The notes beneath the pieces were generated by a model that worked only from the letters and a program-made list of their open reading frames with translations, was not told where the DNA came from and did no database searches. A stretch of 64,000 bases of DNA from the IMG/VR virus record IMGVR_UViG_3300033049_000066, positions 229,279 to 293,278 of that record, one strand, 5' to 3'. Shown one piece after another: positions 17,754 to 42,091 of this stretch (the stretch's first letter is position 1; the number at the start of each line of letters is the position of its first letter). A program made the position numbers and the translations under genes.

Positions 17754-18386
17754 ATGAGTATCTTACAAGAATATTTAAATTATGACGCAGCTAATGTTGA
17801 GCTTCTCACTGAAGCCAACAGCAGCGGCGGCAAAGATTTATACATGAAGGGCATCTGCATTCAAGGCGATCAAAAAAACGCCAACCAACGCATTTACCCT
17901 GCAAGAGAAATCACAACAGCCGTTAAAACACTTAACGAACAAATCAACGGTGGCTATTCTGTCTTAGGCGAAATAGACCATCCGGAAGATTTAAAGATCA
18001 ATTTAGACCGCGTGTCGCACATGATTACAGAAATGTGGATGGAAGGCGCTAACGGTTACGGTAAGTTAAAGATACTTCCAACTCCGATGGGCAAAGTTAT
18101 TGAAACAATGCTACAGTCAAAAGTTAAATTAGGCGTTTCGTCTAGGGGAAGTGGTAATGTTAACGAAGCCACAGGACACGTCAGTGAATTTGAAATAATC
18201 ACTGTAGATATCGTAGCACAGCCATCTGCTCCGGAAGCGTATCCGACAGCTATATATGAAGGCATCATGAATATGAAAGGTGGCTTGAAGTTGTTAGGTA
18301 TTGCAGAAGACGCTTGCGAGAACAAACGTGTACAAAGATATTTGAAAGAAGGCGTAATTGCGTTAATTAAAGATTTAAAGATTTAA
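17754..18386 (+). CDS. gp21: Prohead protease
   Basis: NANQRIYP, GEIDHP, GVSSRGSG, DIVAQPSAP. Confidence 0.96.
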   Translation: MSILQEYLNYDAANVELLTEANSSGGKDLYMKGICIQGDQKNANQRIYPAREITTAVKTLNEQINGGYSVLGEIDHPEDLKINLDRVSHMITEMWMEGANGYGKLKILPTPMGKVIETMLQSKVKLGVSSRGSGNVNEATGHVSEFEIITVDIVAQPSAPEAYPTAIYEGIMNMKGGLKLLGIAEDACENKRVQRYLKEGVIALIKDLKI

Positions 18387-18982
18387 TGACAGAAGCGTTT
18401 GTATATAAGTGGACACAAATATCAACTAAGAAATGGTACATTGGGTCCAGAACAGCAAAAGGTTGTTCTATGCAAGATGGGTATATTTGCTCTAGTAGAA
18501 TTGTTAAACCTTTAATTTTAGAAAATGCAGTTGAATGGAATAGAGAAATACTAGCAGTTGGCACACCAGATAATATGCGCCAGCTCGAAAGTAAAATGCT
18601 ACAGCAGCTTGATGCAAAAAATGATCCGATGAGTTTTAACGAATCAAACGCAGATGGCAAATTTAGTACCGCGGGGATTGAACCGTGGAACAAAGATAAG
18701 AAAACGGGGCACACGCCGTGGAATAAAGGACTTGCTAAAGAGCTTCAGCCAGGATACGGATTGAAGCATACTAAAGAAAATAAAGAATTATTTAGTAAAA
18801 ATCAGCAAGGAGCGAGTAATTCTATGTATGGTGCTACGCCGTGGAATAAAGGTAATACAGGTAAGAAGTGGTTTAACAACGGCTCAATTGAAAAAACTTT
18901 TATACCAGGTAACGAATTGGAAAGTTTTGTTGTAGGAAGATTGACAAAACCCAATATGAGATCGAAAGATCTTAAAATTTAG
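18386..18982 (+). mobile_element. Free-standing GIY-YIG (Seg-like) homing endonuclease
   Basis: FVY...WYIGSR...Y.CSS; PWNKG repeats; NUMOD3-like HTKE. Confidence 0.85.
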
Positions 18983-20112: not shown

Positions 20113-21306
20113 ATGTCACAAGCACTATTAGAAAACCGTTGGGGTGAGACCAAAGAAGCATTGCTTGAAGGTCTTGACGGAACGAAACGTTCATCAATGA
20201 GCGTTATCTTAGAAAATACCCGTAACCACTTAGCAGAATCTGCTTCAAGTGGCGCTACTGCCGCTGGTAACGTTGCAACATTAAACCGTGTTATTTTACC
20301 AGTTATTCGACGTGTTATGCCTACCGTTATTGCTAACGAATTAGTAGGTGTTCAACCAATGAGTGGACCTGTTTCACAGATTCACACACTTCGCGTTCGT
20401 TACGGTGAAACATTAACTGACGGTTCTGCCGCAGCTACTAACGTTGCACCAGGTGATGAAGCTTTATCACCATTCAAAATTGCTCAGGCTTACTCAGCTG
20501 GTAATGGCGCAGCATCACAAGCTAACTATACAGCAGCAGCAACAGCTGGAATGGAAGGCACAGGTGGACGTTCAATAAGCGTACAGATCCTGAAGCAGGC
20601 AGTTGAAGCTAAAACTCGTAAGTTACAAGCACGTTGGACTTTCGAATCAGCACAAGACGCACAGTCTATGCATGGCATCGACGTAGAAGCAGAAATCATG
20701 GCAGCATTAGCGCAAGAAATTACCGCTGAAATTGACCAAGAAATTCTTCTTTCTTTACGTTCACTTGCTAGCACAGAAGAAACTTACAACCAGGCAGCAG
20801 TGTCAGGTACAGCTACATTTGTAGGTGACGAACACGCGGCTCTTGCAGTATTGATCAATCGTACTGCTAATAAGATCGCTCAGCGTACACGTCGTGGTGC
20901 AGGTAACTATGCAGTTGTTTCACCAGCAGCATTAACAGTACTTCAATCAGCTACTACCTCTGCTTTTGCACGTACAACTGAAGGTACTTTTGAAGCACCT
21001 ACAAACACTAAGTTTGTTGGTACTCTTAACTCAGCAATGAAAGTTTACGTTGACAGCTATGCTGCTGACAGTTCGCCAGTACTTGTTGGTTATAAAGGTT
21101 CAAGTGAATCAGACGCACCAGCGTTCTATTGTCCTTACATACCTTTAATGAGTTCAGGTGTTGTACTTGATCCAAGTACGTTTGAACCAGTTGTTAGCTT
21201 CATGACCAGATATGGTTATGTTGAGCTTACAAATACTGCTTCATCTTTCGGCAACGCTGGAGATTATCTCGGAGAAGTGGCCATTTCTAACCTTAGCTTC
21301 CAGTAA
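20113..21306 (+). CDS. gp23: Major capsid protein
   Basis: GVQPMSGP, KTRKLQARWT.E.AQD, EIDQEI, FYCPYIPL, MTRYG. Confidence 0.97.
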   Translation: MSQALLENRWGETKEALLEGLDGTKRSSMSVILENTRNHLAESASSGATAAGNVATLNRVILPVIRRVMPTVIANELVGVQPMSGPVSQIHTLRVRYGETLTDGSAAATNVAPGDEALSPFKIAQAYSAGNGAASQANYTAAATAGMEGTGGRSISVQILKQAVEAKTRKLQARWTFESAQDAQSMHGIDVEAEIMAALAQEITAEIDQEILLSLRSLASTEETYNQAAVSGTATFVGDEHAALAVLINRTANKIAQRTRRGAGNYAVVSPAALTVLQSATTSAFARTTEGTFEAPTNTKFVGTLNSAMKVYVDSYAADSSPVLVGYKGSSESDAPAFYCPYIPLMSSGVVLDPSTFEPVVSFMTRYGYVELTNTASSFGNAGDYLGEVAISNLSFQ

Positions 21307-21348
21307 GCTAACAAAGAAATAAAACTTTACTTAGGTAAATGTTAAATT

Positions 21349-21377
21349 AAAATACGCTCTTCGGAGCGTATTTTTTT
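21349..21377 (+). terminator. Rho-independent terminator after gp23
   Basis: AAAATACGCTC-TTCG-GAGCGTATTTTTTT. Confidence 0.92.
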
Positions 21378-21442
21378 GGCTAGTAAAAGGTTGACTTTAT
21401 GTCGTACTTGTGATAACATGAATATAAAAGTGAAATACTACT

Positions 21443-22040
21443 ATGCAACCTTATACATACATACTTACTAAAACATATACCAACTAACACCTTTTACTAT
21501 GGTGTACGTTATCAAAACGTCAAGAAGAAAATTCCCATTGCTAAAGATTTGTGGGTAAAGTATTTTACAAGTAGTCCAAAAATCAAAAGTTTAATTACAG
21601 AATACGGTGCCGATAGCTTTGAATTTGAGATCCGCAAAATATTTAAAACCCCTGAGCGAGCTACTGCCTGGGAAGCAAAAGTACTCAAGCGGATGAAAGT
21701 GTTAGAAAACAGAAAATGGATTAACGCAAATATCGCCGGGCACATTATGCCTACAGCTGAATCAAATAAGAAGATAAGTGACTTTCACAAAGGAAAGCCA
21801 AAATCCGCAGAACACAGACGTAAGATTAGCGAATCTGTAACAGGAACAACAAAACCGCCTCGGCATGAATGGTTGCAGAATCGCCCCGCTGAACTCATCA
21901 TTGCGCTAATAACCGCCCTTCAAAAAGATAAATTAACATGCTGGAATTTAATAAAAGATCCTGATATCCGGAAACAAAAAGCCTTCGAACACGAAATGGG
22001 CCGGTGTCAGCTGATGGTTGATCGTCTGCAAAAAATATAA
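21443..22040 (+). pseudogene. Frameshifted GIY-YIG homing endonuclease
   Basis: Removing one ATAC from the (ATAC)3 run restores MQPYTYLLKHIPTNTFYYGVR...YFTSS. NUMOD3-like KSAEHRRKISES. Confidence 0.75.
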
Positions 22041-22124
22041 TGTCTGTCCTAGGTGAAATAGCTCGATGCAATGCTGCCGAAGCCGAGCCTAGCAATCCTA
22101 TCACCATCAATGATTCTTATCGAT

Positions 22125-22328
22125 TCACCTCGCTTGCAATCCAATCCAGATGATCACCGTGTCGAAGGCGGCCTCTGCCTCTGGTGACGCCTCTGAGAAA
22201 ATCTTGTCACCTAAGATGTAATTATAATTCGCAAAATCAAGCTGCTTGAAATTCGTCGGGATATTGAGCAACGGACGCCACCTCTTGCCGGCATACCACG
22301 TATCTTTCTTGGCCTTCCTCTGTATCAT
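22125..22328 (-). CDS. Small hypothetical protein (67 aa)
   Basis: ATGA-coupled to the upstream ORF; ends IIWIGLQAR. Confidence 0.6.
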   Translation of the reverse strand: MIQRKAKKDTWYAGKRWRPLLNIPTNFKQLDFANYNYILGDKIFSEASPEAEAAFDTVIIWIGLQAR

Positions 22329-22516
22329 TTGTTGAGCTCCTCCCAGACCCTTGCACCTGCAAAGGCAGTGCAAAAATCTTCACTCCACGCAGTGTACAGA
22401 ACATCATCAATTTTAAAATTGAGGTGATTAAAATCTGTGATCCTTGGTAAAAAGTACCGAGGAACCGGCGTCCAGTAATTTGGACTACCATTGTCAATGT
22501 TTATATAATATATCAT
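22325..22516 (-). CDS. Small hypothetical protein (63 aa)
   Basis: Downstream of a TTGACT-17-TATACT promoter (22615-22643); ends VWEELNK. Confidence 0.6.
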   Translation of the reverse strand: MIYYINIDNGSPNYWTPVPRYFLPRITDFNHLNFKIDDVLYTAWSEDFCTAFAGARVWEELNK

Positions 22517-22796
22517 ATTTTTACCACTAGCATCCTATGTCCAATTACCCGAGCTCTGCTCGGTTGCCTTCTAAGAAGGCAAGGCGTGTAATCGTTCTAC
22601 GCTTGCATAGTATGAGTATAACAGGTAAAATCGCAAAAGTCAATGATATTTCTGTATTTAGAGCAAATTACTCTAAATGGTTGCGAACTTACTATAAATA
22701 AGTTAAGCTAGTGCTGTAAACAGACACAGCAAGAAGCGCGAAATTATGAAAGATAAAGCATCCGATAAAATATGGAATAATCTTAAAAAAGAATAC

Positions 22797-22825
22797 TTGA
22801 CCATTGAGCAAAAAAAAGCTATAAT
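22797..22825 (+). promoter_or_regulatory. sigma70-type promoter
   Basis: TTGACC-17 nt-TATAAT. Confidence 0.7.
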
Positions 22826-22913
22826 ACAAGAACATTATATGCATATTGCTAATGATTCTATAGCAGCGGTACGTATTTTTCTTAAGACTCAAAAATAAGA
22901 TAACGGTTTAAAA

Positions 22914-24088
22914 ATGTTAACATCATACCAGGAAAAAGTTAAGTTACTAATGATATTAAAGTACGGCAGCTTAGAGCTAGCCTTTTTATCTGACGCTAAA
23001 TTTGATAAAACTGAAACCATTATTCTTAGGGACTATTTGTCAATTAAGGTACATCAGAGCAACTCCAAGATATATTACCCGGAAGAAAACAATGAGTGAA
23101 ACCGAGACATTCATGATATTAAAATACGGCAGCATTGCCGAAGCCTTTCGCGAGTACATTTGTCTAACCGAAGACGAAAAAAAGCTAATTCCGACGGACG
23201 AATATGAAATACTAATGGAATATGAATACGAATTGCACCCATTTAACTCCACGCCATTTGAGCCAAAATGAATACACAGACCTTCCTCGCCCTTAAATTT
23301 GGTAGCCTGTTTCGAGCATATCGATATTGGCTTGGAGATGTGAGATTGCGTACAACAATCGATCTCACTGCGGAACAACATTCAATCATGAACATCTATT
23401 TCGAGGACCTTAGCGTCAGCGAAAGAATACGACTTTATAGAAGAGACTGGAAAACCTAATGCAAACGTTTAACTACTACCGAACAAAATTGTACCTGCGC
23501 ATCACCTATGGAAGCGAAGAGGACATTCAAGAAGCAGGTAAGAACCACGAGGACGAGTCCAAGCGGACCCTAATCGCCACCTTCCTAGCCGAGGCCGCTA
23601 AACGAAATGACAGCATCAAATTCTCAAGAAAACGTTAAATTATTTCTGATCCTCCGTCACGGCTCAGTTCAGTCAGCATTCATAAAATGGATGATATACG
23701 AAGACCTTGACCTCTTTAGTAAGGAAGAAAACGCCCTGCTTGAAGCACTTTTTGCGGACTACTATCCAAATTTACTTCGCGCAAAAAATCCCATGCTTCA
23801 AAAACAGAATCAAAAAGAGGTTGACAAATGACAAAACGTATGCTAAAATATAAGCTTAACAACGCTCTCAAAAGAAGCAGACTATTCTCAACCAATTCAA
23901 CCTCTAGGATGAAAATAATGACACTAGAACAAGACCATCTTATTACACTGCTGCGCATAAAATATGGTGATATCGACGTCGTAACTGGTATGTGGTTGTA
24001 TAATGATCCGGAACTTAGTCCTGAAGAACTCGCGGCAGTTGATGCTTGGCTAAATTCCGATGAAAAAGAGGTTGACATCTTGGGCTAG
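22914..24088 (+). CDS. Tandem family of six small proteins (22914-23099, 23092-23271, 23268-23459, 23459-23638, 23607-23831, ~23918-24088)
   Basis: Overlapping start/stop coupling; shared N-terminal motif ILKYGS/ALKFGS/RITYGS/ILRHGS/RIKYGD. Confidence 0.75.
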
Positions 24089-24138
24089 TTGTCGTATAAT
24101 ATATATATAACAGTTAGATAACGAGCAAAGGTATAGAT
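24072..24138 (+). promoter_or_regulatory. Early promoter plus conserved leader
   Basis: TTGACA-17-TATAAT then ATAACAGTTAGATAAC, the same leader as the four repeats at 39.7-41.8 kb. Confidence 0.85.
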
Positions 24139-24450
24139 ATGTCAGCAAGTAAAACTATTATTAAAGAACTCCGGAAAGAAATCAGGGAATTATCAAATAA
24201 ACTCGAGGATTCGGAGAAGCATTTAGTTAGGCAAAAGCGACATATTCAAAGAATGGAGACTGCACATCTCGTAAAACTGTCGGATCTAAATTCACGAACA
24301 AATATCATAGCAAGTCGCCTGCGTTATAACTTTTCAAAAGAACTGACTTGGATGGCACTAGTCGATGACGGAGAATCGGTCTTCAGGATAATTCAAGAGG
24401 TTATTACTCAGCTTCGCGATACAGCTCATCCAAGCCAAGTTAACAGATAG
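24139..24450 (+). CDS. Hypothetical coiled-coil protein
   Basis: ORF directly behind an early promoter and RBS. Confidence 0.7.
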   Translation: MSASKTIIKELRKEIRELSNKLEDSEKHLVRQKRHIQRMETAHLVKLSDLNSRTNIIASRLRYNFSKELTWMALVDDGESVFRIIQEVITQLRDTAHPSQVNR

Positions 24451-24456
24451 AATTCG

Positions 24457-24565
24457 AACAACAAACAACAAACAACAAACAACAACAAACAACAAACAAC
24501 AACAAACAACAAACAACAACAAACAACAACAAACAACAACAAACAACAACAAACAACAACAAACA
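24457..24565 (+). repeat. A/C-only simple repeat (AAACAAC and AAACAACAAC units)
   Basis: About 109 nt with no G or T, intergenic. Confidence 0.97.
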
Positions 24566-24571
24566 TATATT

Positions 24572-26464
24572 ATGAAGTCAATACCAAAGTTCGAAAACCT
24601 AAATAAAGGTGGGGTACCGCTCGGGACATTATCTGTCTTTTCGTCCGACACTATATCATCAAAACCTCTAAGTAGCAAAGATCTCGTATGGGATCGATTG
24701 CAAAACGGAATCACACCAAAACCGGACTGGTCAGCAATAAGTATGACCCAGGCAATGTCCCGATTAAATCAGGCAATGCGAAAAGCTAAACCCACAGTGG
24801 AATTTTTTGTCAAAAAATCGCGTGACTACGAGCAAAATGGGATTGCTGATGATTGAATGAACACAGATTACAAAAAGTTGGAATCACCATATCCGAGTAA
24901 ATACTATAACCATTGAATACGTAGAATAGAATTATGATATTACCAAAGAAATTGTTTGAGAAAATAGAATTTTTTGAACACTCAATTGACCAGAGCTGCG
25001 GCCCTGTTGAAGTCAGTGACAAATTTATCCTACATTTCAGGGACTGGTGGCGCCGGAAAAAAGTGATAAAAATTAATCGTATCATTGAACATTACAACGC
25101 AGATGACGGATCATTTGTTCATAGATCGACACCCGGCGCAGCAGATTTATATAACCAATTAAACGACTGGGCAATATCAACTTTTGAAGAAAAGCTTACT
25201 AGCATATCAAGAAAGTATAAAACTCACAACAATGATAATATAATTGAGTTGAATCCAAAACCGGCCAACTTAGATGATGAGTAAAAGACGTAAGCGTAGA
25301 CAGCGCGGTAAGCGCATCGAAGAGCGAAAACTAGCTCTTAAAGTTTGGGTGAGGCTACAACGGAGACAAGGCCCTTCGGAAATGCCACCAGCCCCGCACT
25401 GGCTTAGACATTTCTCGTCCGTAGCACAAGAGCTTCACACTCTTGTAGTCGATCAGAATTCGTTAGAATATGAAACCACAACACGGGAAATCGCATACCG
25501 ACGAAAGAAAGATACCGCCGCTAAAAAAAGAAGAAGAACATATATTAAAAACGTTTATCTAGCAAAACACAAGCCCGTAATAGAATGAAAGAATCCAAAA
25601 TACAGATAACCCAACGCAAGATACGCAATGCGGTCCGTCGCCACAAAGATCGTGAAGCTGCCGCAGTATGGAAAAAGCTCACAGCATCCGAACCCAGGTC
25701 AATTGAGCATTACTTTAGCGAATTTAATGCTGCGGTCAAGTTGTCTTACAAGACACAACGACAACATCGAGAAAATAACTTATTAAAAACTGCCACGGGC
25801 TTAACAGCTACGACAATATCAACAGATGAGGTCCAAGATGGAAAAAAGTGAGATAATCTACGAGAGCGTGTGCCGCGACGTGATTCAATGCGAGCACTAT
25901 ATCGCGTGGGAATTTTATTCCGAGACGAATGACGATGAACGGTACTACGAATCCAACCTCACCTGTCATTCGTGTCAGCTAGTAGGGCAATCGTACAACA
26001 TAACCGAGTACAATGAATTCTGCCCCAATCAGAAAATTCTCAACAAGTATCACGACCGCCGCGTGATTGAAATCATAGCCCACGAGAAAAAGTGCGCAGA
26101 AGAAAAAATGTGGAAAATACTAAATGAGTAAACTTAGCAAAACTCAAGCAAAAGTTTGGGATCGCTTGATAAATCAGCCAGTCCCACCACGACCAACGTA
26201 CCCAACCGCAGGTACCAAGTACCACAATACAAAAACCAACCGGCTGCACATCTACAATGGCAAACAATGGATAGAGATAACGTGAGTAAGAACCTTAGCA
26301 AAACTCAAGCAAAAGTTTGGGAGAGACTGAACGCCAAGCCCACCTCGCTCGCAGATAAAGAAATTGAGATGATCCGCCGCTACATAAAATCCGACGAAGT
26401 ATTACAGTCCGCGAAGATGACGCTAGACATAGAACTACTCCTGGCAGACCGAAACAAAAATTAA
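24572..26464 (+). CDS. Cluster of small hypothetical proteins (24572-24856, 24934-25284, 25274-25588, 25585-25851, ~25838-26131, 26124-26285, 26282-26464)
   Basis: Mostly coupled ORFs; six of seven carry a (V/M)WxxL motif. Confidence 0.7.
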
Positions 26465-26576
26465 GTACTAATTCAATTTTCTTCATAAATAAGACATACG
26501 CTAGAATAATCTAGTTTATGCGGATCCAACCGCGTAGCCCTTAGAACGGCAATTCTTAAACAAAGGAGAAATTCAA

Positions 26577-27128
26577 ATGGGACGACCAATCAACAAACGA
26601 TACTTGGGTGAGCCAACTGTCACAGGTAACGAAATTAAAGTACAATTTTTCAACGGCACAGCTTCAGTAAATGGCTGGATCGTCAAGCAGCTAGGCGCTA
26701 AAAAGTTTCGCTGCACAGATGGTACAGACACAGCAGATTGTCTGTTAGTTGACAAACTAGCAGCAGCTCTGATAGCTGGTGAAATGTCAATTAGTGTACG
26801 AGACGACAGCGCCGCAGTTAAGCAGATCGTTAAAATCGCTGGACGTAAAGTGACACTTGGGTCAGGCGAAAGCATTCCTTGGGACTTTAGCAGTTCAACA
26901 AGTGACGAACGTGTCGAAGTTGAAGAAGGTGGCGACCAATCAGCTCTGACAATTAGCATTCTTGACGCAACCGCTGGTGTAACGTACGCAATCGCAGTAC
27001 CAGGAACCACAGATTTCACACTACTTGGCGCAGCAGACAGCACAGCAGCAACCGAGTTTGAAATGAATGATGTTACTCCAGAAGGTACCGGAACTGTAAC
27101 AGCAGTCGAAGATACATTCGGTCTATAA
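26577..27128 (+). CDS. Virion structural protein
   Basis: MGRPINKRYLG...WIVKQ.G.KKF; late promoter, strong RBS and own terminator. Confidence 0.7.
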   Translation: MGRPINKRYLGEPTVTGNEIKVQFFNGTASVNGWIVKQLGAKKFRCTDGTDTADCLLVDKLAAALIAGEMSISVRDDSAAVKQIVKIAGRKVTLGSGESIPWDFSSSTSDERVEVEEGGDQSALTISILDATAGVTYAIAVPGTTDFTLLGAADSTAATEFEMNDVTPEGTGTVTAVEDTFGL

Positions 27129-27146
27129 TTTTTAATTAAGTTAGTT

Positions 27147-27170
27147 AAAAAACCCCATCTGGGGTTTTTT
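27147..27170 (+). terminator. Rho-independent terminator
   Basis: AAAAAACCCCA-TC-TGGGGTTTTTT. Confidence 0.8.
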
Positions 27171-27235
27171 AATGACCAAAAACTCTAATTAGGAATATTT
27201 AATTTGGATAAATAACAGTATATGGAGCATAACGA

Positions 27236-29400: not shown

Positions 29401-32022
29401 ATGGCCATTAATTACATCAAAGGTGAATCACTAGCTGCAAATTTATTGCGCGGTGGAGTTGACCTAGCTGTTGAAACAGATTTACTCTATGTTGATGTAG
29501 CCAACGGACGCATTGGTATACAAAATGCAACACCAGGAACAACACTTGACATCACAGGAACAGTATCTGCGATGGCAGTCGTAACACCGATTGTAACCGT
29601 CGGCAACGTTATTATTAGCAACAACAATATTACAACCTCCATAGATGACTTAACCCTTACTTCAGCAACCACAAATGTTTCCTTACTTGGTGACCTAACA
29701 TTTAACGCTCCAGTTAGCGACATAACTGGTCAAGGTGATCTAGATAATTTAAACAATCAATCCGCACTTACAATAGTCACAACACTAGTTGATACACCGT
29801 ATTACCTGGGCAACGCAAGAGATGCAGTGTCTATAGGCTCGGACAGCGTAATCGCCGCAGCTAGCAGCCTGTATCTCACCCCAGACGGCTTGACAATATT
29901 TTATGTTGACAACAGCGGTGCTGGTACAATCCCAGTGGATGTGTACCAATCAACACTTGGTGTAGCCTTTGATTTATCAACAGCTGGTGTACCATCATTT
30001 ACAACGATTACAGGCGGCGCAATAACAGAAGCTGCCCATGCCGTTACTTTTAATATAAACGGCTTGGAAATGTATATTTCAAAATATACAAACGCTGGCG
30101 TTGATACGATAGTAGAAAAATTTACCCTTAGCTTAGCATTTGATTTATCATCGACAGTGACTTACATAGGAAATATTGTGTTAGGCGCTGGTGATGCGTT
30201 TAACTTTGCGCCAACATATTCCGCAGATGGATTAAAAGCTTACAACGCAGCCATTGACACCGCCGGCATATTTATTAATGAATACGATCTTAGCCCAGCA
30301 TATGATTTAACAACCGCTGTTTTTAATGGCAACTTTGATATCTCAACTGAGATAGTTAACACCACAAATTACATTACGACAGCCATGTCAACAGATGGAT
30401 TTACTGTATTTGCAGCGCAATATGCGGCGACAAATAACGTACTAGTAAGCTATGCATTAGGCACCGCACTTGATATTACAACCGCAGTTGAGCTACAAAC
30501 AGTTACCCCAGCAACAACCGCCGAAGTACAAGGCATATGGTTCCCATCAGATGGATTTAATTTTTACTGGCTAGACGATGACGGTGTGCTACTTCAATTT
30601 GATAGTACAAACAAATCCCCAAACACGACATCCACGGCGCTTAATTTCAGCGGCGCAGGAAAACTTATTACAACGGATGACGGAGTACAGATAAGTGGGC
30701 AGCTAATTTTACCAGGATATGCTACTGCGAGTATACCAGCTACAACTATAGCAGGCGGTCTGATTTACGACACAGATACAAACTCATTGAAAGTTTACAA
30801 CGGCAATGACTGGACAGCAATTGCTGGAGGCGGCAGTGGTGGCGGCAGTGGTGGCGGTATGCAAGGATGGAATTTGTCCACCGCAACAAACGCATCAAAG
30901 TCATTTTCAGTAGCAGGTCAGTTAGGTGAACCCACAGATTTAGCTATAAGTGAAGACGGTACAAAAGTTTATATTACAGATTTTGATGGCGTAGCGCCAG
31001 GGGTGTATCAGTATAATTTGACCACAGCTTGGGATTTTAGCACCGCATCGTACTCGGGCAATTTCGCCTCGACAATCGGCAACGGGGATTTCCCACTGTC
31101 CATAGCGTTCAATCGCAGCGGAACAAAAATGTTCATCGGGTCTACGAATGAAGTACATCAGCACACTTTGTCCCCGGCATGGGAACTTAGCGGCGCGAAC
31201 CCGGATCTAATCTCGTACACAATCGGCGCAGGTGTCGCAGCATCTGCGATAGCGTTCAACCCAGCCGGCACGGTGTTGCTCGTGCTAGACGACACAACAC
31301 GGACCGTCACCCAACATACTATGACATTACCGTACGACGTGGAAAATGCGGTAGCATCAGGGCTAAGCGGAGATGTTTTTGGCACAGTTAATAGTGGAGC
31401 ACGTGGGCTTAGTCTTAGTCCAGATGGTTACAAGATGTACGTCTCAGATGGACCAAATGAAGAAGTATACGAGTACCAGCTCACCACAGCACACGATCCA
31501 TCCACCTTAGTCTACACCAATCGGGCCCTAAGCACCACGGCCATCGACGGAGACATAGGCGGGATATTTTTTAGATACGACGGAAACAGACTGTACATGG
31601 TAGGCACCACCACCGACGCAGCCTATCAGTTCGACTTAGCATGGCACGACGAATACAGCCTCGCCACACAAGATTACGTAGACACCACATCCGTTAGCAT
31701 CGCGGGTGATGCTATGACCGGTGCACTAACAACCACCGGTGGTGTTGACTCACTAACAACCGCAACGACCGTAGTAAACGTAGCCGCAGCAGCAGCGCCG
31801 ACAGTCGGTCAAGTACTTACAGCAACCTCGGACTCACTTGCGACATGGCAAGATGCAGCAGGCGGCGACCCAGCCTCAGAGACCGTATCTGGAACAATTG
31901 AAATAGCAACACAGATAGAAGTTGATACCGGCACTGATGCGGTCCGTGCGGTGACACCAGCAACGCTACAAAAGAAAGCCGAAGAAACAGCAATGATAAT
32001 GTCTGTAGTATTTGGGATATAA
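29401..32022 (+). CDS. Tail fibre / receptor-binding protein with beta-propeller-like repeats
   Basis: LYVDVANGRIGI; repeated DG.K.Y...Y.L..AWD.STA units; gp34-like ATQIEVDTGTD..RAVTP. Confidence 0.8.
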   Translation: MAINYIKGESLAANLLRGGVDLAVETDLLYVDVANGRIGIQNATPGTTLDITGTVSAMAVVTPIVTVGNVIISNNNITTSIDDLTLTSATTNVSLLGDLTFNAPVSDITGQGDLDNLNNQSALTIVTTLVDTPYYLGNARDAVSIGSDSVIAAASSLYLTPDGLTIFYVDNSGAGTIPVDVYQSTLGVAFDLSTAGVPSFTTITGGAITEAAHAVTFNINGLEMYISKYTNAGVDTIVEKFTLSLAFDLSSTVTYIGNIVLGAGDAFNFAPTYSADGLKAYNAAIDTAGIFINEYDLSPAYDLTTAVFNGNFDISTEIVNTTNYITTAMSTDGFTVFAAQYAATNNVLVSYALGTALDITTAVELQTVTPATTAEVQGIWFPSDGFNFYWLDDDGVLLQFDSTNKSPNTTSTALNFSGAGKLITTDDGVQISGQLILPGYATASIPATTIAGGLIYDTDTNSLKVYNGNDWTAIAGGGSGGGSGGGMQGWNLSTATNASKSFSVAGQLGEPTDLAISEDGTKVYITDFDGVAPGVYQYNLTTAWDFSTASYSGNFASTIGNGDFPLSIAFNRSGTKMFIGSTNEVHQHTLSPAWELSGANPDLISYTIGAGVAASAIAFNPAGTVLLVLDDTTRTVTQHTMTLPYDVENAVASGLSGDVFGTVNSGARGLSLSPDGYKMYVSDGPNEEVYEYQLTTAHDPSTLVYTNRALSTTAIDGDIGGIFFRYDGNRLYMVGTTTDAAYQFDLAWHDEYSLATQDYVDTTSVSIAGDAMTGALTTTGGVDSLTTATTVVNVAAAAAPTVGQVLTATSDSLATWQDAAGGDPASETVSGTIEIATQIEVDTGTDAVRAVTPATLQKKAEETAMIMSVVFGI

Positions 32023-39668: not shown

Positions 39669-39902
39669 AATCTTTCCTTTGCTCTTTATCTAACTGTTAT
39701 ATACATTATATGACATATAACGCCAAAGGTCAACCTCTAATTGCGGTTATTTAAGATTATTTTAGGGCTGTTTTACTATGATTTACTGGTACTGCTACGT
39801 GAATGCCGGCCAAAAACGCCGCTAAAAACCAGTATTCTTATATAAATCAATAACTTACCAATATATTACTCTGATTTAATAAATGCTAGAACCTTATATA
39901 AA

Positions 39903-40256
39903 TCAATGACTTACTAGAGCAGCTCTCGGGGATTCCCCGATCACCTGCTTTCCGTGCCTGTACCACTCCTTCGTGCCATCAGCTAGTTCAACAGCCGGCC
40001 CGCCTATTCTGTGTAGTTTACCGTATCTGTACCACCACGTAGCACCATTTGTAAGTGCCATAGCCGGGCCGCCTATTCTGTGTAATTTTCCATTTTGGTA
40101 CCAAAATTTGTCACCATTTGCGTACTCGATAGCAGGCCCATCTTCTCTGTGTGATTTTCCATTTTGGTACCAAAATTTGTCACCATCTTTGTCAACACGA
40201 ATATCGTACTTTAAGCGATTGAATGTTTCTTGTGCTGTACCTTCAATCACGAGCAA
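39903..40256 (-). CDS. HREDGPA-repeat (MORN-variant-like) protein
   Basis: Repeats of WY.NGKLHR..GPA. Confidence 0.85.
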   Translation of the reverse strand: MLVIEGTAQETFNRLKYDIRVDKDGDKFWYQNGKSHREDGPAIEYANGDKFWYQNGKLHRIGGPAMALTNGATWWYRYGKLHRIGGPAVELADGTKEWYRHGKQVIGESPRAALVSH

Positions 40257-40943: not shown

Positions 40944-41092
40944 AATCTTTCCTTTGCTTGTTATCTAACTGTTATATACATTATATGACAAGTAGCGCCA
41001 AAGGTCAACCTCTATTTGCAGATATTTAAGATTATTTTAGATTATTTTAGATTATTTAAGGGCTCTCTTGGACACGATGACGGTTTATAGAC

Positions 41093-41336: not shown

Positions 41337-41431
41337 TCGTTTTCTCCTACGAAATATTGTTATCTAACTGTTATATACATTATATGACAAGTAGCGCCAA
41401 AGGTCAACCTCTAATTGCGGTTATTAGCAAA

Positions 41432-41689: not shown

Positions 41690-42091
41690 AATCTTTCCTT
41701 TCTCTCGTTATCTAACTGTTATATACATTATATGACATATAGCGCCAAAGGTCAACCTCTAATTGCGGTTATTAGCAAATTAAATTTAACTGTGCTAAGT
41801 CGTTGATTTTAAAATAATGCTGTTTTGTGGTGTTTTATACTATATAGTGTATCAACACGCACGATAAGAAACAAAAACGCCGTTAAAAACCACTATTCTT
41901 ATATAAATCAATGACTTACCAATATATTACTCTGCATAGTAACTCTATATAAATCAATGACTTACACCATTCTGCCGTCTTTCCTGGATAAGTGTATATA
42001 TAATAAAGTACAGAAGATAAAAATAAAGGTAGACATTTAGGATTACTTGTCGTATAATAGTAATACAAATTAGGAACTAGGAGTTCATAGC

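What the first reader, a model, noticed from the sequence alone, without database searches (positions are those of the whole stretch)
26124..26464. Two adjacent genes with the same tag-bearing N-terminus on different cargos
Seen: CTTAGCAAAACTCAAGCAAAAGTTTGGGA is duplicated, giving MSKLSKTQAKVWDRL (26124-26285, 53 aa) and MSKNLSKTQAKVWERL (GTG 26282-26464, 60 aa); similarity stops right after the motif. The first cargo, YHNTKTNRLHIYNGKQWIEI, resembles YDTDTNSLKVYNGNDWTAI in the tail fibre at 29401. This is the best direct evidence that the tag is copied as a module.
Basis: partly seen in the sequence, partly recalled or inferred. Interest (0 to 1): 0.7.

Follow-up and report, generated by a model that had tools for sequence, protein, structure and literature searches.

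The report
Shared gene start that recombines
Two tiny neighbouring genes of a marine giant phage start with the same 29 DNA letters. Natural phage populations have already recombined at that shared start and lost one of the genes, so this is ordinary gene shuffling caught in the act, not a proven protein address tag.

Summary
A 29-nt string occurs exactly twice in the 293-kb phage genome, at 26133-26161 and 26294-26322. It forms the 5' coding ends of two overlapping small genes, and protein similarity stops after about 20 residues.

These are the last two of five tandem, basic, database-orphan genes that share only a ...VWx[R/K]L...P helix. They appear to form one unit behind a consensus sigma-70-type promoter cassette. 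The unit sits in a 5.3-kb insertion hot spot between the major capsid gene and the next conserved structural gene of a T4-like jumbo phage.

Gene 1 is a chimera: the family helix plus a roughly 30-aa three-strand beta module that is otherwise found inside tail-fibre-like proteins. Gene 2's body is one long predicted helix.

Codons are identical inside the 29-nt tract (9 of 9) but differ at all 4 conserved residues flanking it. That indicates old paralogues with a recent conversion tract.

A seawater assembly carries an allele that lacks exactly 161 bp between the repeats and fuses gene 1's start to gene 2's body. Both alleles coexist in another sample.

The motif occurs nowhere else in the genome or in public data, is internal in three of the five members, and has no protease site. 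A targeting "tag" is therefore unsupported. The shared start demonstrably acts as a recombination patch.

The parts
24063..24135 (+). Promoter and leader cassette: TTGACA-17-TATAAT at 24072-24100, followed by a conserved leader with a Shine-Dalgarno site. It is the likely early-type promoter of the small-gene unit.
   Evidence: 12/12 match to the sigma-70 consensus. It is one of at least 31 copies of a 65-80-nt cassette in the genome. Other contigs in the runs share this stretch with different flanks.
24139..24450 (+). First small gene behind the cassette (103 aa, basic, no tag motif).
   Evidence: ORF list. Its frame is the best of six by codon usage. No family match.
24457..24565 (+). CAA-rich microsatellite (periods 7/10/17) in the leader of the next gene. 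Assemblies break here.
   Evidence: Tandem Repeats Finder. L002 begins at 24471. Logan contigs end at 24456 and restart at 24568.
24572..24856 (+). Family member 1 (94 aa). The motif LVWDRL...P lies at residues 38-43.
   Evidence: Returned as own protein P0002.
24934..25284 (+). Unrelated small ORF (116 aa) inside the unit.
25277..25588 (+). Family member 2 (103 aa from the second ATG; pI 11.3). It starts ATGAGTAAA like gene 1, has an Arg/Lys-rich insert, then KVWVRL...P.
25585..25851 (+). Family member 3 (88 aa). The motif AVWKKL...P lies at residues 27-32. It overlaps the previous gene in ATGA.
25826..26131 (+). Unrelated Cys-rich small ORF (101 aa). Its stop lies inside gene 1's ATGAGTAA.
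26124..26285 (+). Gene 1 (53 aa), a chimera. Family helix at residues 6-16, a Pro-rich link, then a three-strand beta module at residues ~22-53 of the type found in tail-fibre-like proteins.
   Evidence: PHROG hits 9e-6 and 1.4e-5. AlphaFold2 gives H6-16 and E32-35/40-44/49-52, with pLDDT above 90 in the beta part. tblastn to cyanophage and pelagiphage proteins. Coding score is only marginally best in frame. Not called in public gene sets.
26133..26161 (+). Repeat copy 1 (29 nt exact), codons 4-12 of gene 1 plus two bases of codon 13.
26133..26293 (+). The 161-bp segment that is absent from the natural deletion allele. It equals one repeat copy plus the 132 nt between the copies, so it removes the body of gene 1 and the start of gene 2.
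   Evidence: Run X2 contig joins 26132 to 26294, with 29 letters fitting both sides. In run X1 there is a graph bubble: depth 197.5 for 26132-26323 against 100 for a 31-nt junction record, with flanks at 329-340.
26282..26464 (+). Gene 2 (60 aa from GTG). Family helix at residues 7-17, then one long helix at 23-59.
   Evidence: AlphaFold2 mean pLDDT 85. The public call begins at ATG 26267. In the deletion allele the same body is read from gene 1's ATG.
26294..26322 (+). Repeat copy 2 (29 nt exact).
30736..30822 (+). The only other copy of the beta module in the genome. It lies inside the 873-aa fibre-like gene 29401-32022 and is followed by a Gly-rich stretch.

Best explanation
**What it is.** The duplicated 29-nt string is the 5' coding end of the last two genes of a five-gene tandem family. 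The family encodes very small, basic proteins restricted to this phage lineage.

**Where it sits.**
- The genes appear to lie in one early-type transcription unit. A sigma-70-consensus promoter cassette stands upstream, and from 24934 onwards the genes overlap stop-to-start.
- The unit fills an insertion hot spot between the major capsid gene and the next conserved structural gene of a marine T4-like jumbo phage.

**What the proteins share.** Only an N-proximal amphipathic helix, ...[K/A/L]VWx[R/K]L followed by a proline. The rest of each protein is unrelated. Gene 1 carries a ~30-residue beta module that elsewhere is a piece of tail-fibre-like proteins, so it is a chimera. Gene 2 carries one long helix.

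**How the identity arose.** The letter-perfect identity of the two starts is a short, recent gene-conversion or recombination tract between two old paralogues.

**What it does now.** The tract serves as a patch of homology for the phage's recombination system. Crossing-over between the two copies removes 161 bp. That deletes the body of gene 1 and yields one in-frame gene: gene 1's ATG and tag joined to gene 2's body.

**Shown:** the repeat, the family, the different bodies, the codon mosaic, the deletion allele and its coexistence with the two-gene allele.

**Inferred:**
- The deletion is the derived state.
- The genes are expressed early.
- The shared helix is kept because it contacts one common partner, while the variable tails differ in effect.
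For: - **Repeat:** significant and unique to these two sites.
- **Family of five, clustered:** all five VWx[RK]L...P genes lie within 1.9 kb on one strand. A profile of the motif finds nothing else in the genome.
- **Bodies unrelated:** BLASTP aligns only residues 1-20. No pair of C-terminal parts is significant. Predicted folds differ, helix plus beta-meander against helix plus long helix.
- **Independent homology of gene 1's body:** phrog_8309 at 9e-6 and phrog_1325 at 1.4e-5. It shows 48-52% identity to segments of a 380-aa cyanophage protein and a 401-aa pelagiphage tail fibre.
- **Codon mosaic:** 9 of 9 shared codons are identical within the tract (P about 1.4e-4 for independent codon choice). 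All 4 conserved residues just outside it (K3, R, L, P) use different codons.
- **Deletion allele:** the X2 contig skips exactly 26133-26293, with 29 nt fitting both sides. X1 shows both paths. The product is an intact 59-aa frame.
- **Hot spot:** the gap between the capsid gene and the 183-aa gene is 158-1032 bp in 40 of 43 related loci that held both genes. It is about 4 kb with unrelated cargo (cold-shock and DsrC-like genes) in the other three, and 5271 bp here.
- **Promoter cassette:**
- **Precedent:** recombination between short conserved elements flanking orphan genes in T4-type hyperplastic regions (PMC2839356).
Against: - No expression data exist. No RNA run was listed, so early expression and translation are inferred only.
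- Gene 1's coding score is barely better than that of an antisense frame, and gene callers skipped it. It could be a non-functional by-product.
- The runs are held as assembled contigs, not reads. Allele proportions are rough, and the absence of the two-gene allele from X2 cannot be proven.
- My reading of the 31-nt record in X1 as the deletion junction is an inference. It rests on 30 of its 31 letters lying at 26132-26161 and on the run's count of one record that fits two places.
- The direction of the event (deletion or insertion) rests on parsimony.
- No close relatives exist for a comparative test.
Confidence: 0.7

Rival explanations
1. **A true address or binding tag.** The N-terminal helix would be a portable signal, for example a capsid-targeting leader like that of the T4 internal proteins, or a helix that docks on one host or phage partner. 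Different cargos would be hung on it, and selection would keep the tag while the cargos are exchanged.
For: - Unrelated bodies sit behind the same ~20 residues.
- All five proteins are small and basic, pI 9.5-11.3, as T4 internal proteins are.
- The phage has T4-type head genes next door: portal, prohead protease and major head protein.
- The motif is kept at the protein level with different codons in R, L and P. Something therefore selects for the peptide itself.
Against: - The motif occurs only in five adjacent genes, not on dispersed cargos, and nowhere else in public data.
- It is internal in three of the five members.
- No member has an [L/I]-x-E site directly after the motif. This is read from the sequences; the cleavage rule is from general knowledge of T4 gp21.
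- The unit stands behind a sigma-70-type cassette of the kind that precedes many non-structural small genes. That points to early, not late, expression.
Confidence: 0.15
2. **Gene 1 is junk.** The two-gene form would be a recent, neutral or slightly harmful rearrangement. It would have placed a fibre-gene fragment behind a copy of gene 2's start. The ORF would be a non-functional by-product that the population is losing again.
For: - Gene 1 is only 53 aa, was not called by public gene finders, and has a marginal coding score.
- An allele without it is common in one sample and assembled alone in another.
- Its beta module normally occurs only inside proteins of 300-900 aa.
Against: - The frame is intact, with a start-stop overlap at both ends like its neighbours.
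- The module is complete and folds confidently from a single sequence.
- Its DNA is far from the phage's own fibre copy, 54% identical, so it is not a fresh fragment.
- Residues after the repeat (R, L, P) fit the family with their own codons. Gene 1 is therefore an old family member, not a new paste.
- A 67-position PHROG profile of a 'virion structural protein' matches the same module near its C-terminal end (phrog_20787, E 0.0015).
Confidence: 0.12
3. **The 29-nt identity is kept at the nucleic-acid level.** It would serve as a regulatory site, for example an operator for a translational repressor on both mRNAs or a small hairpin. Recombination or protein function would not be the reason for the identity.
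For: - Identity is perfect at every synonymous site in the tract, and it begins at the translation start region of both genes.
- A 7-bp hairpin can be drawn within it.
Against: - Folding is no better than for shuffled sequence (z -1.26 and -0.36).
- Only two copies exist in 293 kb. The other three family members lack the sequence.
- The deletion allele shows that the two copies are not both needed.
Confidence: 0.05
4. **Simple tandem paralogy over the whole length.** The C-terminal halves would merely have diverged beyond recognition.
For: - The genes are tandem, on the same strand and of similar small size, in a family of five.
- A loose multiple alignment can be drawn along the whole length for some members. 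Member 24572 against gene 2 gives a shuffle p of 0.08.
Against: For the pair in question the bodies have different predicted secondary structure. Gene 1's body also has significant homologues of its own in fibre-like proteins. Divergence from a helical ancestor does not explain that.
Confidence: 0.08

Closest known systems
PeSL cassettes (promoter-early stem-loops) and modular shuffling in hyperplastic regions of T4-type phages (Arbiol et al. 2010, PMC2839356; also PMC4122927)
   Same: - Short conserved sequences flank database-orphan small genes in a plastic region between core genes.
- Recombination between two copies removes the gene in between and leaves one chimeric copy, as in the RB49/phi1 ORF192 example.
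- This phage also carries a large family of sigma-70-type promoter cassettes, with at least 31 copies.
   Different: - Here the recombining patch is 29 nt inside the coding sequence, codons 4-13. It is not an intergenic promoter plus stem-loop of ~100 bp.
- The product is therefore an in-frame protein chimera rather than a clean cassette excision.
- Only two copies of this patch exist.
- No mini-circle was looked for.
Capsid targeting sequence (CTS) of the T-even internal proteins (IPI, IPII, IPIII and their many variants)
   Same: - A short shared N-terminal leader sits on otherwise diverse, small, basic proteins.
- The genes lie in polymorphic loci of phages with T4-type heads (PMC3012670; PMC2839356).
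   Different: - The leader here is unrelated in sequence.
- It is not at the N-terminus in three of five members.
- It is not followed by a prohead-protease site.
- It sits behind an early-type promoter.
- Packaging into the head is untested.
Deletion between short direct repeats in phage T4 non-essential regions (Mosig et al. 1998 and Singer et al. 1982, as cited in PMC2839356)
   Same: A deletion of small non-essential ORFs whose end points lie in a short patch of homology (under 50 bp), produced by the phage's own recombination and replication machinery.
   Different: Here it is seen as a natural polymorphism in seawater populations rather than in laboratory deletion mutants. It also joins two reading frames in phase.
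The beta module of tail-fibre-like proteins (phrog_1325, phrog_8309; weakly Pfam DUF7360)
   Same: Gene 1 residues ~22-53 carry the conserved ...AG..Y.NT.TN.L.[IV]YNG..W..[IV] pattern. It is shared with the phage's own 873-aa fibre-like protein, a cyanophage S-RIM14 protein and the Pelagibacter phage HTVC034P tail fibre.
   Different: In those proteins the module is a small part of a protein of 380-873 aa, in two of the three cases (this phage's fibre and the cyanophage protein) just before Gly-rich stretches. Here it is the whole body of a 53-aa protein behind an unrelated helix.

Membership tests
T4-type capsid targeting sequence (internal-protein leader) | The same short leader on otherwise unrelated proteins | tested here: met
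   Gene 1 and gene 2 align only over residues 1-20. Their bodies have different predicted folds.
T4-type capsid targeting sequence (internal-protein leader) | The leader sits at the extreme N-terminus of every member | tested here: not met
   The motif starts at residue 11-12 in genes 1 and 2, but at residues 21, 28 and 39 in members 25277, 25585 and 24572.
T4-type capsid targeting sequence (internal-protein leader) | A prohead-protease cleavage site ([L/I]-x-E) directly after the leader | tested here: not met
   Reading the five sequences, no [L/I]-x-E follows the motif in any member. The rule itself comes from general knowledge of T4 gp21.
T4-type capsid targeting sequence (internal-protein leader) | The protein is present inside the head and is ejected with the DNA | not testable with these tools
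   This needs virion proteomics. The phage is known only from metagenomes.
PeSL-type mobile regulatory cassette | An intergenic element made of a strong sigma-70-like promoter plus a stem-loop | tested here: not met
   The 29-nt repeat lies inside two coding frames and holds no promoter. Its hairpin is not better than chance. The genome does hold a separate promoter-cassette family, whose stem-loops were not examined.
PeSL-type mobile regulatory cassette | Copies flank orphan ORFs in a plastic region between core genes | tested here: met
   Orphan status. Hot spot between the capsid gene and the 183-aa gene.
PeSL-type mobile regulatory cassette | Recombination between two copies deletes or inserts the ORF in between | tested here: met
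   A 161-bp deletion allele has its end points in the repeat.
Simple tandem paralogues | Similarity over the whole length of the proteins | tested here: not met
   (p = 0.71 for the parts after the motif), plus the different folds.
Simple tandem paralogues | Adjacent genes on the same strand with a shared family motif | tested here: met
   Five genes within 1.9 kb. The profile finds only these.
Fibre beta module (phrog_1325 / phrog_8309; Pfam DUF7360) | A significant match to the family profile | tested here: inconclusive
   PHROG E-values of 9e-6 and 1.4e-5. Pfam DUF7360 scores only 16.1-17.8 bits against a cut-off of 27.6. tblastn E is 1e-3 to 3e-3 to phage proteins. The predicted three-strand sheet is confident.

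The most novel reading that the evidence does not exclude
The ~20-residue helix would do two jobs at once.

- **As a peptide**, it would be a functional docking or address signal shared by a set of early effector proteins.
- **As DNA**, it would be an in-frame recombination linker.

The phage could then swap whole protein bodies behind a constant targeting helix, a prokaryotic-virus counterpart of exon shuffling. The 161-bp allele would be one such exchange caught in a natural population.
Probability: 0.15. Interest if true: 0.7.

Novelty: new member of a known kind. Interest (0 to 1): 0.35.

Why it matters
- **Gene turnover seen in nature.** Two alleles that differ by an exact repeat-to-repeat deletion coexist in seawater. 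The crossover lies inside coding sequence, so it makes an in-frame protein chimera.
- **Scope of T4-type shuffling.** The result suggests that short-homology shuffling described for T4-type hyperplastic regions also operates in uncultured T4-like jumbo phages. It also suggests that such shuffling can act on protein-coding leaders, not only on intergenic cassettes.
- **Limits.** It does not reveal a new biological system. The function of the five small proteins remains unknown.

Tried and rejected
**Homologue searches**
- Gene 2 found only itself. Gene 1 found nothing.
- A family profile against 1.84 billion representatives returned only the window's own four called genes.
- The degenerate DNA pattern for KTQAKVW[DE]RL found only the identical sister contig in IMG/VR and nothing in JGI metagenomes.
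- blastn of the region against cultured phages gave no match.
- The ESM Atlas gave no usable hit for gene 2 or member 25277.

**Structure and family searches**
- Pfam gave nothing above threshold for any small gene.
- The PDB sequence search and Foldseek on the gene 1 model gave only insignificant hits, E at least 0.59.
- A homotrimer prediction for gene 1 returned no verdict, score 0.00. It is not evidence either way.

**Nucleic-acid tests**
- RNA folding of both start regions is not better than shuffled sequence.
- A weaker likeness of the repeat to 25560-25574 is at chance level (E 2.3) and was dropped.

**Expression and other variants**
- No RNA run was listed.
- No other joints were reported in 21300-27200 in the three runs. 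The only other differences were two base changes at 27150 and 27152 in X2 and a 2-nt gap at 24102 carried by a 57-nt record on the repeated promoter cassette in X1.

**Comparative analysis**
- It was not possible. The nearest other loci share only 50-69% protein identity in the flanking gene and lack the cluster.
Full report
**Where the window lies.** The window is the last 64 kb of a 293,278-bp IMG/VR virus record, 41.6% G+C. Its head genes are of the T4 type:
- portal (phrog_213), prohead protease (phrog_207) and major head protein (phrog_138);
- the capsid protein is 65-66% identical to those of Vibrio phage 2.275.O and Pseudomonas phage PA5oct, both jumbo phages.

The DNA is held by two seawater metagenome runs.

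**The observation.** It is correct.
With flanks it is 31/32 identical. It occurs nowhere else in the genome (E 4e-11; all other matches are at chance level).
- It forms codons 4-13 of ATG 26124-26285 (53 aa) and codons 5-14 of GTG 26282-26464 (60 aa).
- The two genes overlap in GTGA. Allowing one extra codon in gene 2, the likeness starts at the start codons ([A/G]TGAGTAA[A/G]).
- BLASTP aligns residues 1-20 only.
- The public gene call for gene 2 starts five codons earlier, at ATG 26267. Gene 1 is absent from the public protein collection.

**A family of five.**
- Three further genes just upstream on the same strand carry the same core, [K/A/L]VWx[R/K]L followed within nine residues by a proline. 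They start at 24572, 25277 and 25585.
- In the six-frame translation of the whole genome, VWx[RK]L occurs seven times. Five of these lie in these genes, all within 1.9 kb on one strand.
- A profile built on the motif finds no other copy in the genome.
- The motif is N-terminal only in genes 1 and 2. In the other three it begins at residue 21, 28 or 39, behind Arg/Lys-rich stretches.
- All five proteins are basic, pI 9.5-11.3.
- Three of them begin with the same nine letters, [A/G]TGAGTAA[A/G]. That string occurs only nine times in the genome on both strands.
- After the motif, no pair shows significant similarity.
- The family has no relatives. None appeared in 5.8 billion clustered proteins (word-limited search), in 1.84 billion representatives with a profile, or in IMG/VR and JGI contigs with a degenerate DNA pattern. 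The only exception is an identical sister contig (L002, 0 differences in 8,655 nt).

**The two bodies.**
- AlphaFold2 predicts for gene 2 a helix at 7-17 and one long helix at 23-59 (mean pLDDT 85).
- For gene 1 it predicts a helix at 6-16, a proline-rich link and a three-strand sheet at 32-52, with pLDDT above 90 from the single sequence.
- The sheet region has homologues of its own: phrog_8309 (9e-6), phrog_1325 (1.4e-5) and phrog_21413 (2e-4).
- It is 48% identical to residues ~48-80 of a 380-aa cyanophage S-RIM14 protein and 52% identical to a segment of the 401-aa tail fibre of Pelagibacter phage HTVC034P.
- The only other copy in this genome is in the 873-aa fibre-like gene, at 30736-30822. 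It shares 12/29 residues but only 47/87 nt, so it is not the source of a recent copy.
- Gene 1 is therefore a chimera. Residues 1-20 belong to the family and residues ~22-53 are a fibre-type module.

**How old is the identity?**
- Inside the tract all nine shared codons (L S K T Q A K V W) are identical. With this genome's codon usage that has a probability of about 1.4e-4 if codons were chosen independently.
- Just outside the tract, the four residues that are still conserved (K3, R, L, P) all use different codons (AAA/AAG, CGC/AGA, TTG/CTG, CCA/CCC).
- The flanks are thus old paralogues held by selection on the peptide. The 29-32-nt tract is young, either a gene-conversion or recombination patch or, less likely, a site constrained as nucleic acid.
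- RNA folding gives no support for the nucleic-acid option (z -1.26 and -0.36).

**The deletion allele.** I laid the assembled contigs of the two seawater runs on the region.
- In run X2 a 3,348-nt contig runs from 24568 to 26132 and continues at 26294. It skips 161 nt, with 29 letters fitting either side of the joint.
- In run X1 the assembly graph splits at the same place:
  - one piece ends at 26161;
  - a 192-nt piece covers 26132-26323 at depth 197.5;
  - a 31-nt record at depth 100 lies with 30 of its 31 letters at 26132-26161, and the run's summary counts one record that fits a second place;
  - a further piece starts at 26294;
  - the flanks have depth 329-340.
- The repeat is shorter than the assembler's 31-letter words, so repeat collapse cannot create such a joint. 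I take the 31-nt record to be the junction word of the deleted form.
- On that reading about one third of the X1 population lacks the segment and two thirds carry it. This step is an inference from contig tables, not from reads.
- The deleted form reads as one intact 59-aa gene: gene 1's ATG and tag joined to gene 2's body. This also argues that the functional N-terminus of gene 2 is MSK(N)LSK, not the upstream ATG.
- The segment carries its own diverged start region for gene 2, and gene 1's post-repeat residues fit the family with their own codons. The two-gene form is therefore the more likely ancestor, and the short form a deletion by crossing-over between the repeats.

**Context.**
- In 40 of 43 related loci that held both genes, the capsid gene and the homologue of the 183-aa gene at 26577 are 158-1032 bp apart.
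- In the other three loci the gap is about 4 kb and holds unrelated genes, among them a cold-shock-domain protein and a DsrC-like protein.
- Here the gap is 5,271 bp. The site is an insertion hot spot.
- The gap holds three near-consensus sigma-70-type promoters on the coding strand, at 22797, 23821 and 24072. The window has 10 such matches against 0.78 expected.
- The promoter at 24072 belongs to a 65-80-nt cassette comprising the -35 box, a conserved spacer, the -10 box and a conserved leader with a ribosome-binding site. It has at least 31 copies across the genome.
- From 24934 to 26464 the genes overlap stop-to-start. For each gene the annotated frame is the best of six by codon usage, though only marginally for gene 1.
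- This is the layout described for hyperplastic regions of T4-type phages. There, orphan early genes stand behind strong sigma-70-like promoter cassettes and are gained and lost by recombination between short conserved sequences (PMC2839356).

**What the tag is not shown to be.**
- The present motif shares the general idea and the small basic proteins. It fails the testable defining features: it is not N-terminal in three members and no [L/I]-x-E site follows it.
- Its promoter context suggests early, not late, expression.
- It is not spread over unlinked genes.
- A docking or address function of the helix remains possible, because the peptide is conserved with different codons. Nothing here tests it.

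**Verdict.**
- The best account is a lineage-specific tandem family of small early-type proteins with a shared helix and unrelated tails. One member is a chimera with a fibre module.
- The two last members were recently homogenised over 29 nt. That patch now mediates loss of gene 1 in natural populations.
- This is a new member of a known kind of phage genome plasticity. It is mainly interesting because the crossover is in frame and both alleles are seen in nature.

Noticed in passing
window 24063-24135 (+); also 39676-39738 (-), 40951-41017 (-), 41359-41412 (-), 41691-41760 (-), 42016-42059 (+); at least 31 copies in the 293-kb genome: A conserved 65-80-nt cassette precedes many small genes. 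It comprises a -35 box (TTGACC), an almost invariant 17-nt spacer, a -10 box (TATAAT) and a conserved leader ending in a ribosome-binding site. It looks like a family of early promoter cassettes comparable to PeSLs. Four copies within 39.6-41.8 kb are 73-92% identical over 100 nt.
   Followed up: partly
window 24457-24565: A 109-nt CAA-rich microsatellite (periods 7, 10 and 17) lies in the leader of gene 24572. Three independent assemblies break there. It could be an unstructured translation leader or a length-variable tract.
   Followed up: partly
window 22914-24088 (+): A second tandem set of about six small ORFs shares an N-proximal motif of the form [L/M]ILKYGS..[A]F and is otherwise dissimilar. 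This is the same pattern of a conserved start with variable tails. Two of the ORFs are preceded by near-consensus promoters with an 18-nt repeat (23809-23826 and 24060-24077).
   Followed up: no
window 18386-18982 and 21549-22040 (+): Two ORFs match the homing-endonuclease family phrog_314 (E 5e-13 and 3e-12). One lies between the prohead protease and the scaffold-like gene. The other lies directly after the major capsid gene, at the edge of the insertion hot spot.
   Followed up: no
L040 2811-3011 and 3455-3751 (and L041, L042): In three related jumbo-phage contigs the same hot spot between the capsid gene and the 183-aa gene holds a cold-shock-domain gene (PF00313, 1e-24) and a DsrC-like gene (PF04358, 3e-22). 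The site therefore collects host-like accessory genes in other lineages.
   Followed up: partly
window 39834-39914 and 41895-41965: There are four copies of a 25-nt repeat containing TATAAATA, the T4 late-promoter consensus. A one-mismatch version (CATAAATA, 26484-26491) lies 85 nt before the 183-aa structural gene that follows gene 2.
   Followed up: no
window 27150 and 27152: Apart from the 161-bp indel, these two A>G changes in run X2 are the only base differences seen between the two seawater populations over 21300-27200. The phage populations are almost clonal.
   Followed up: no
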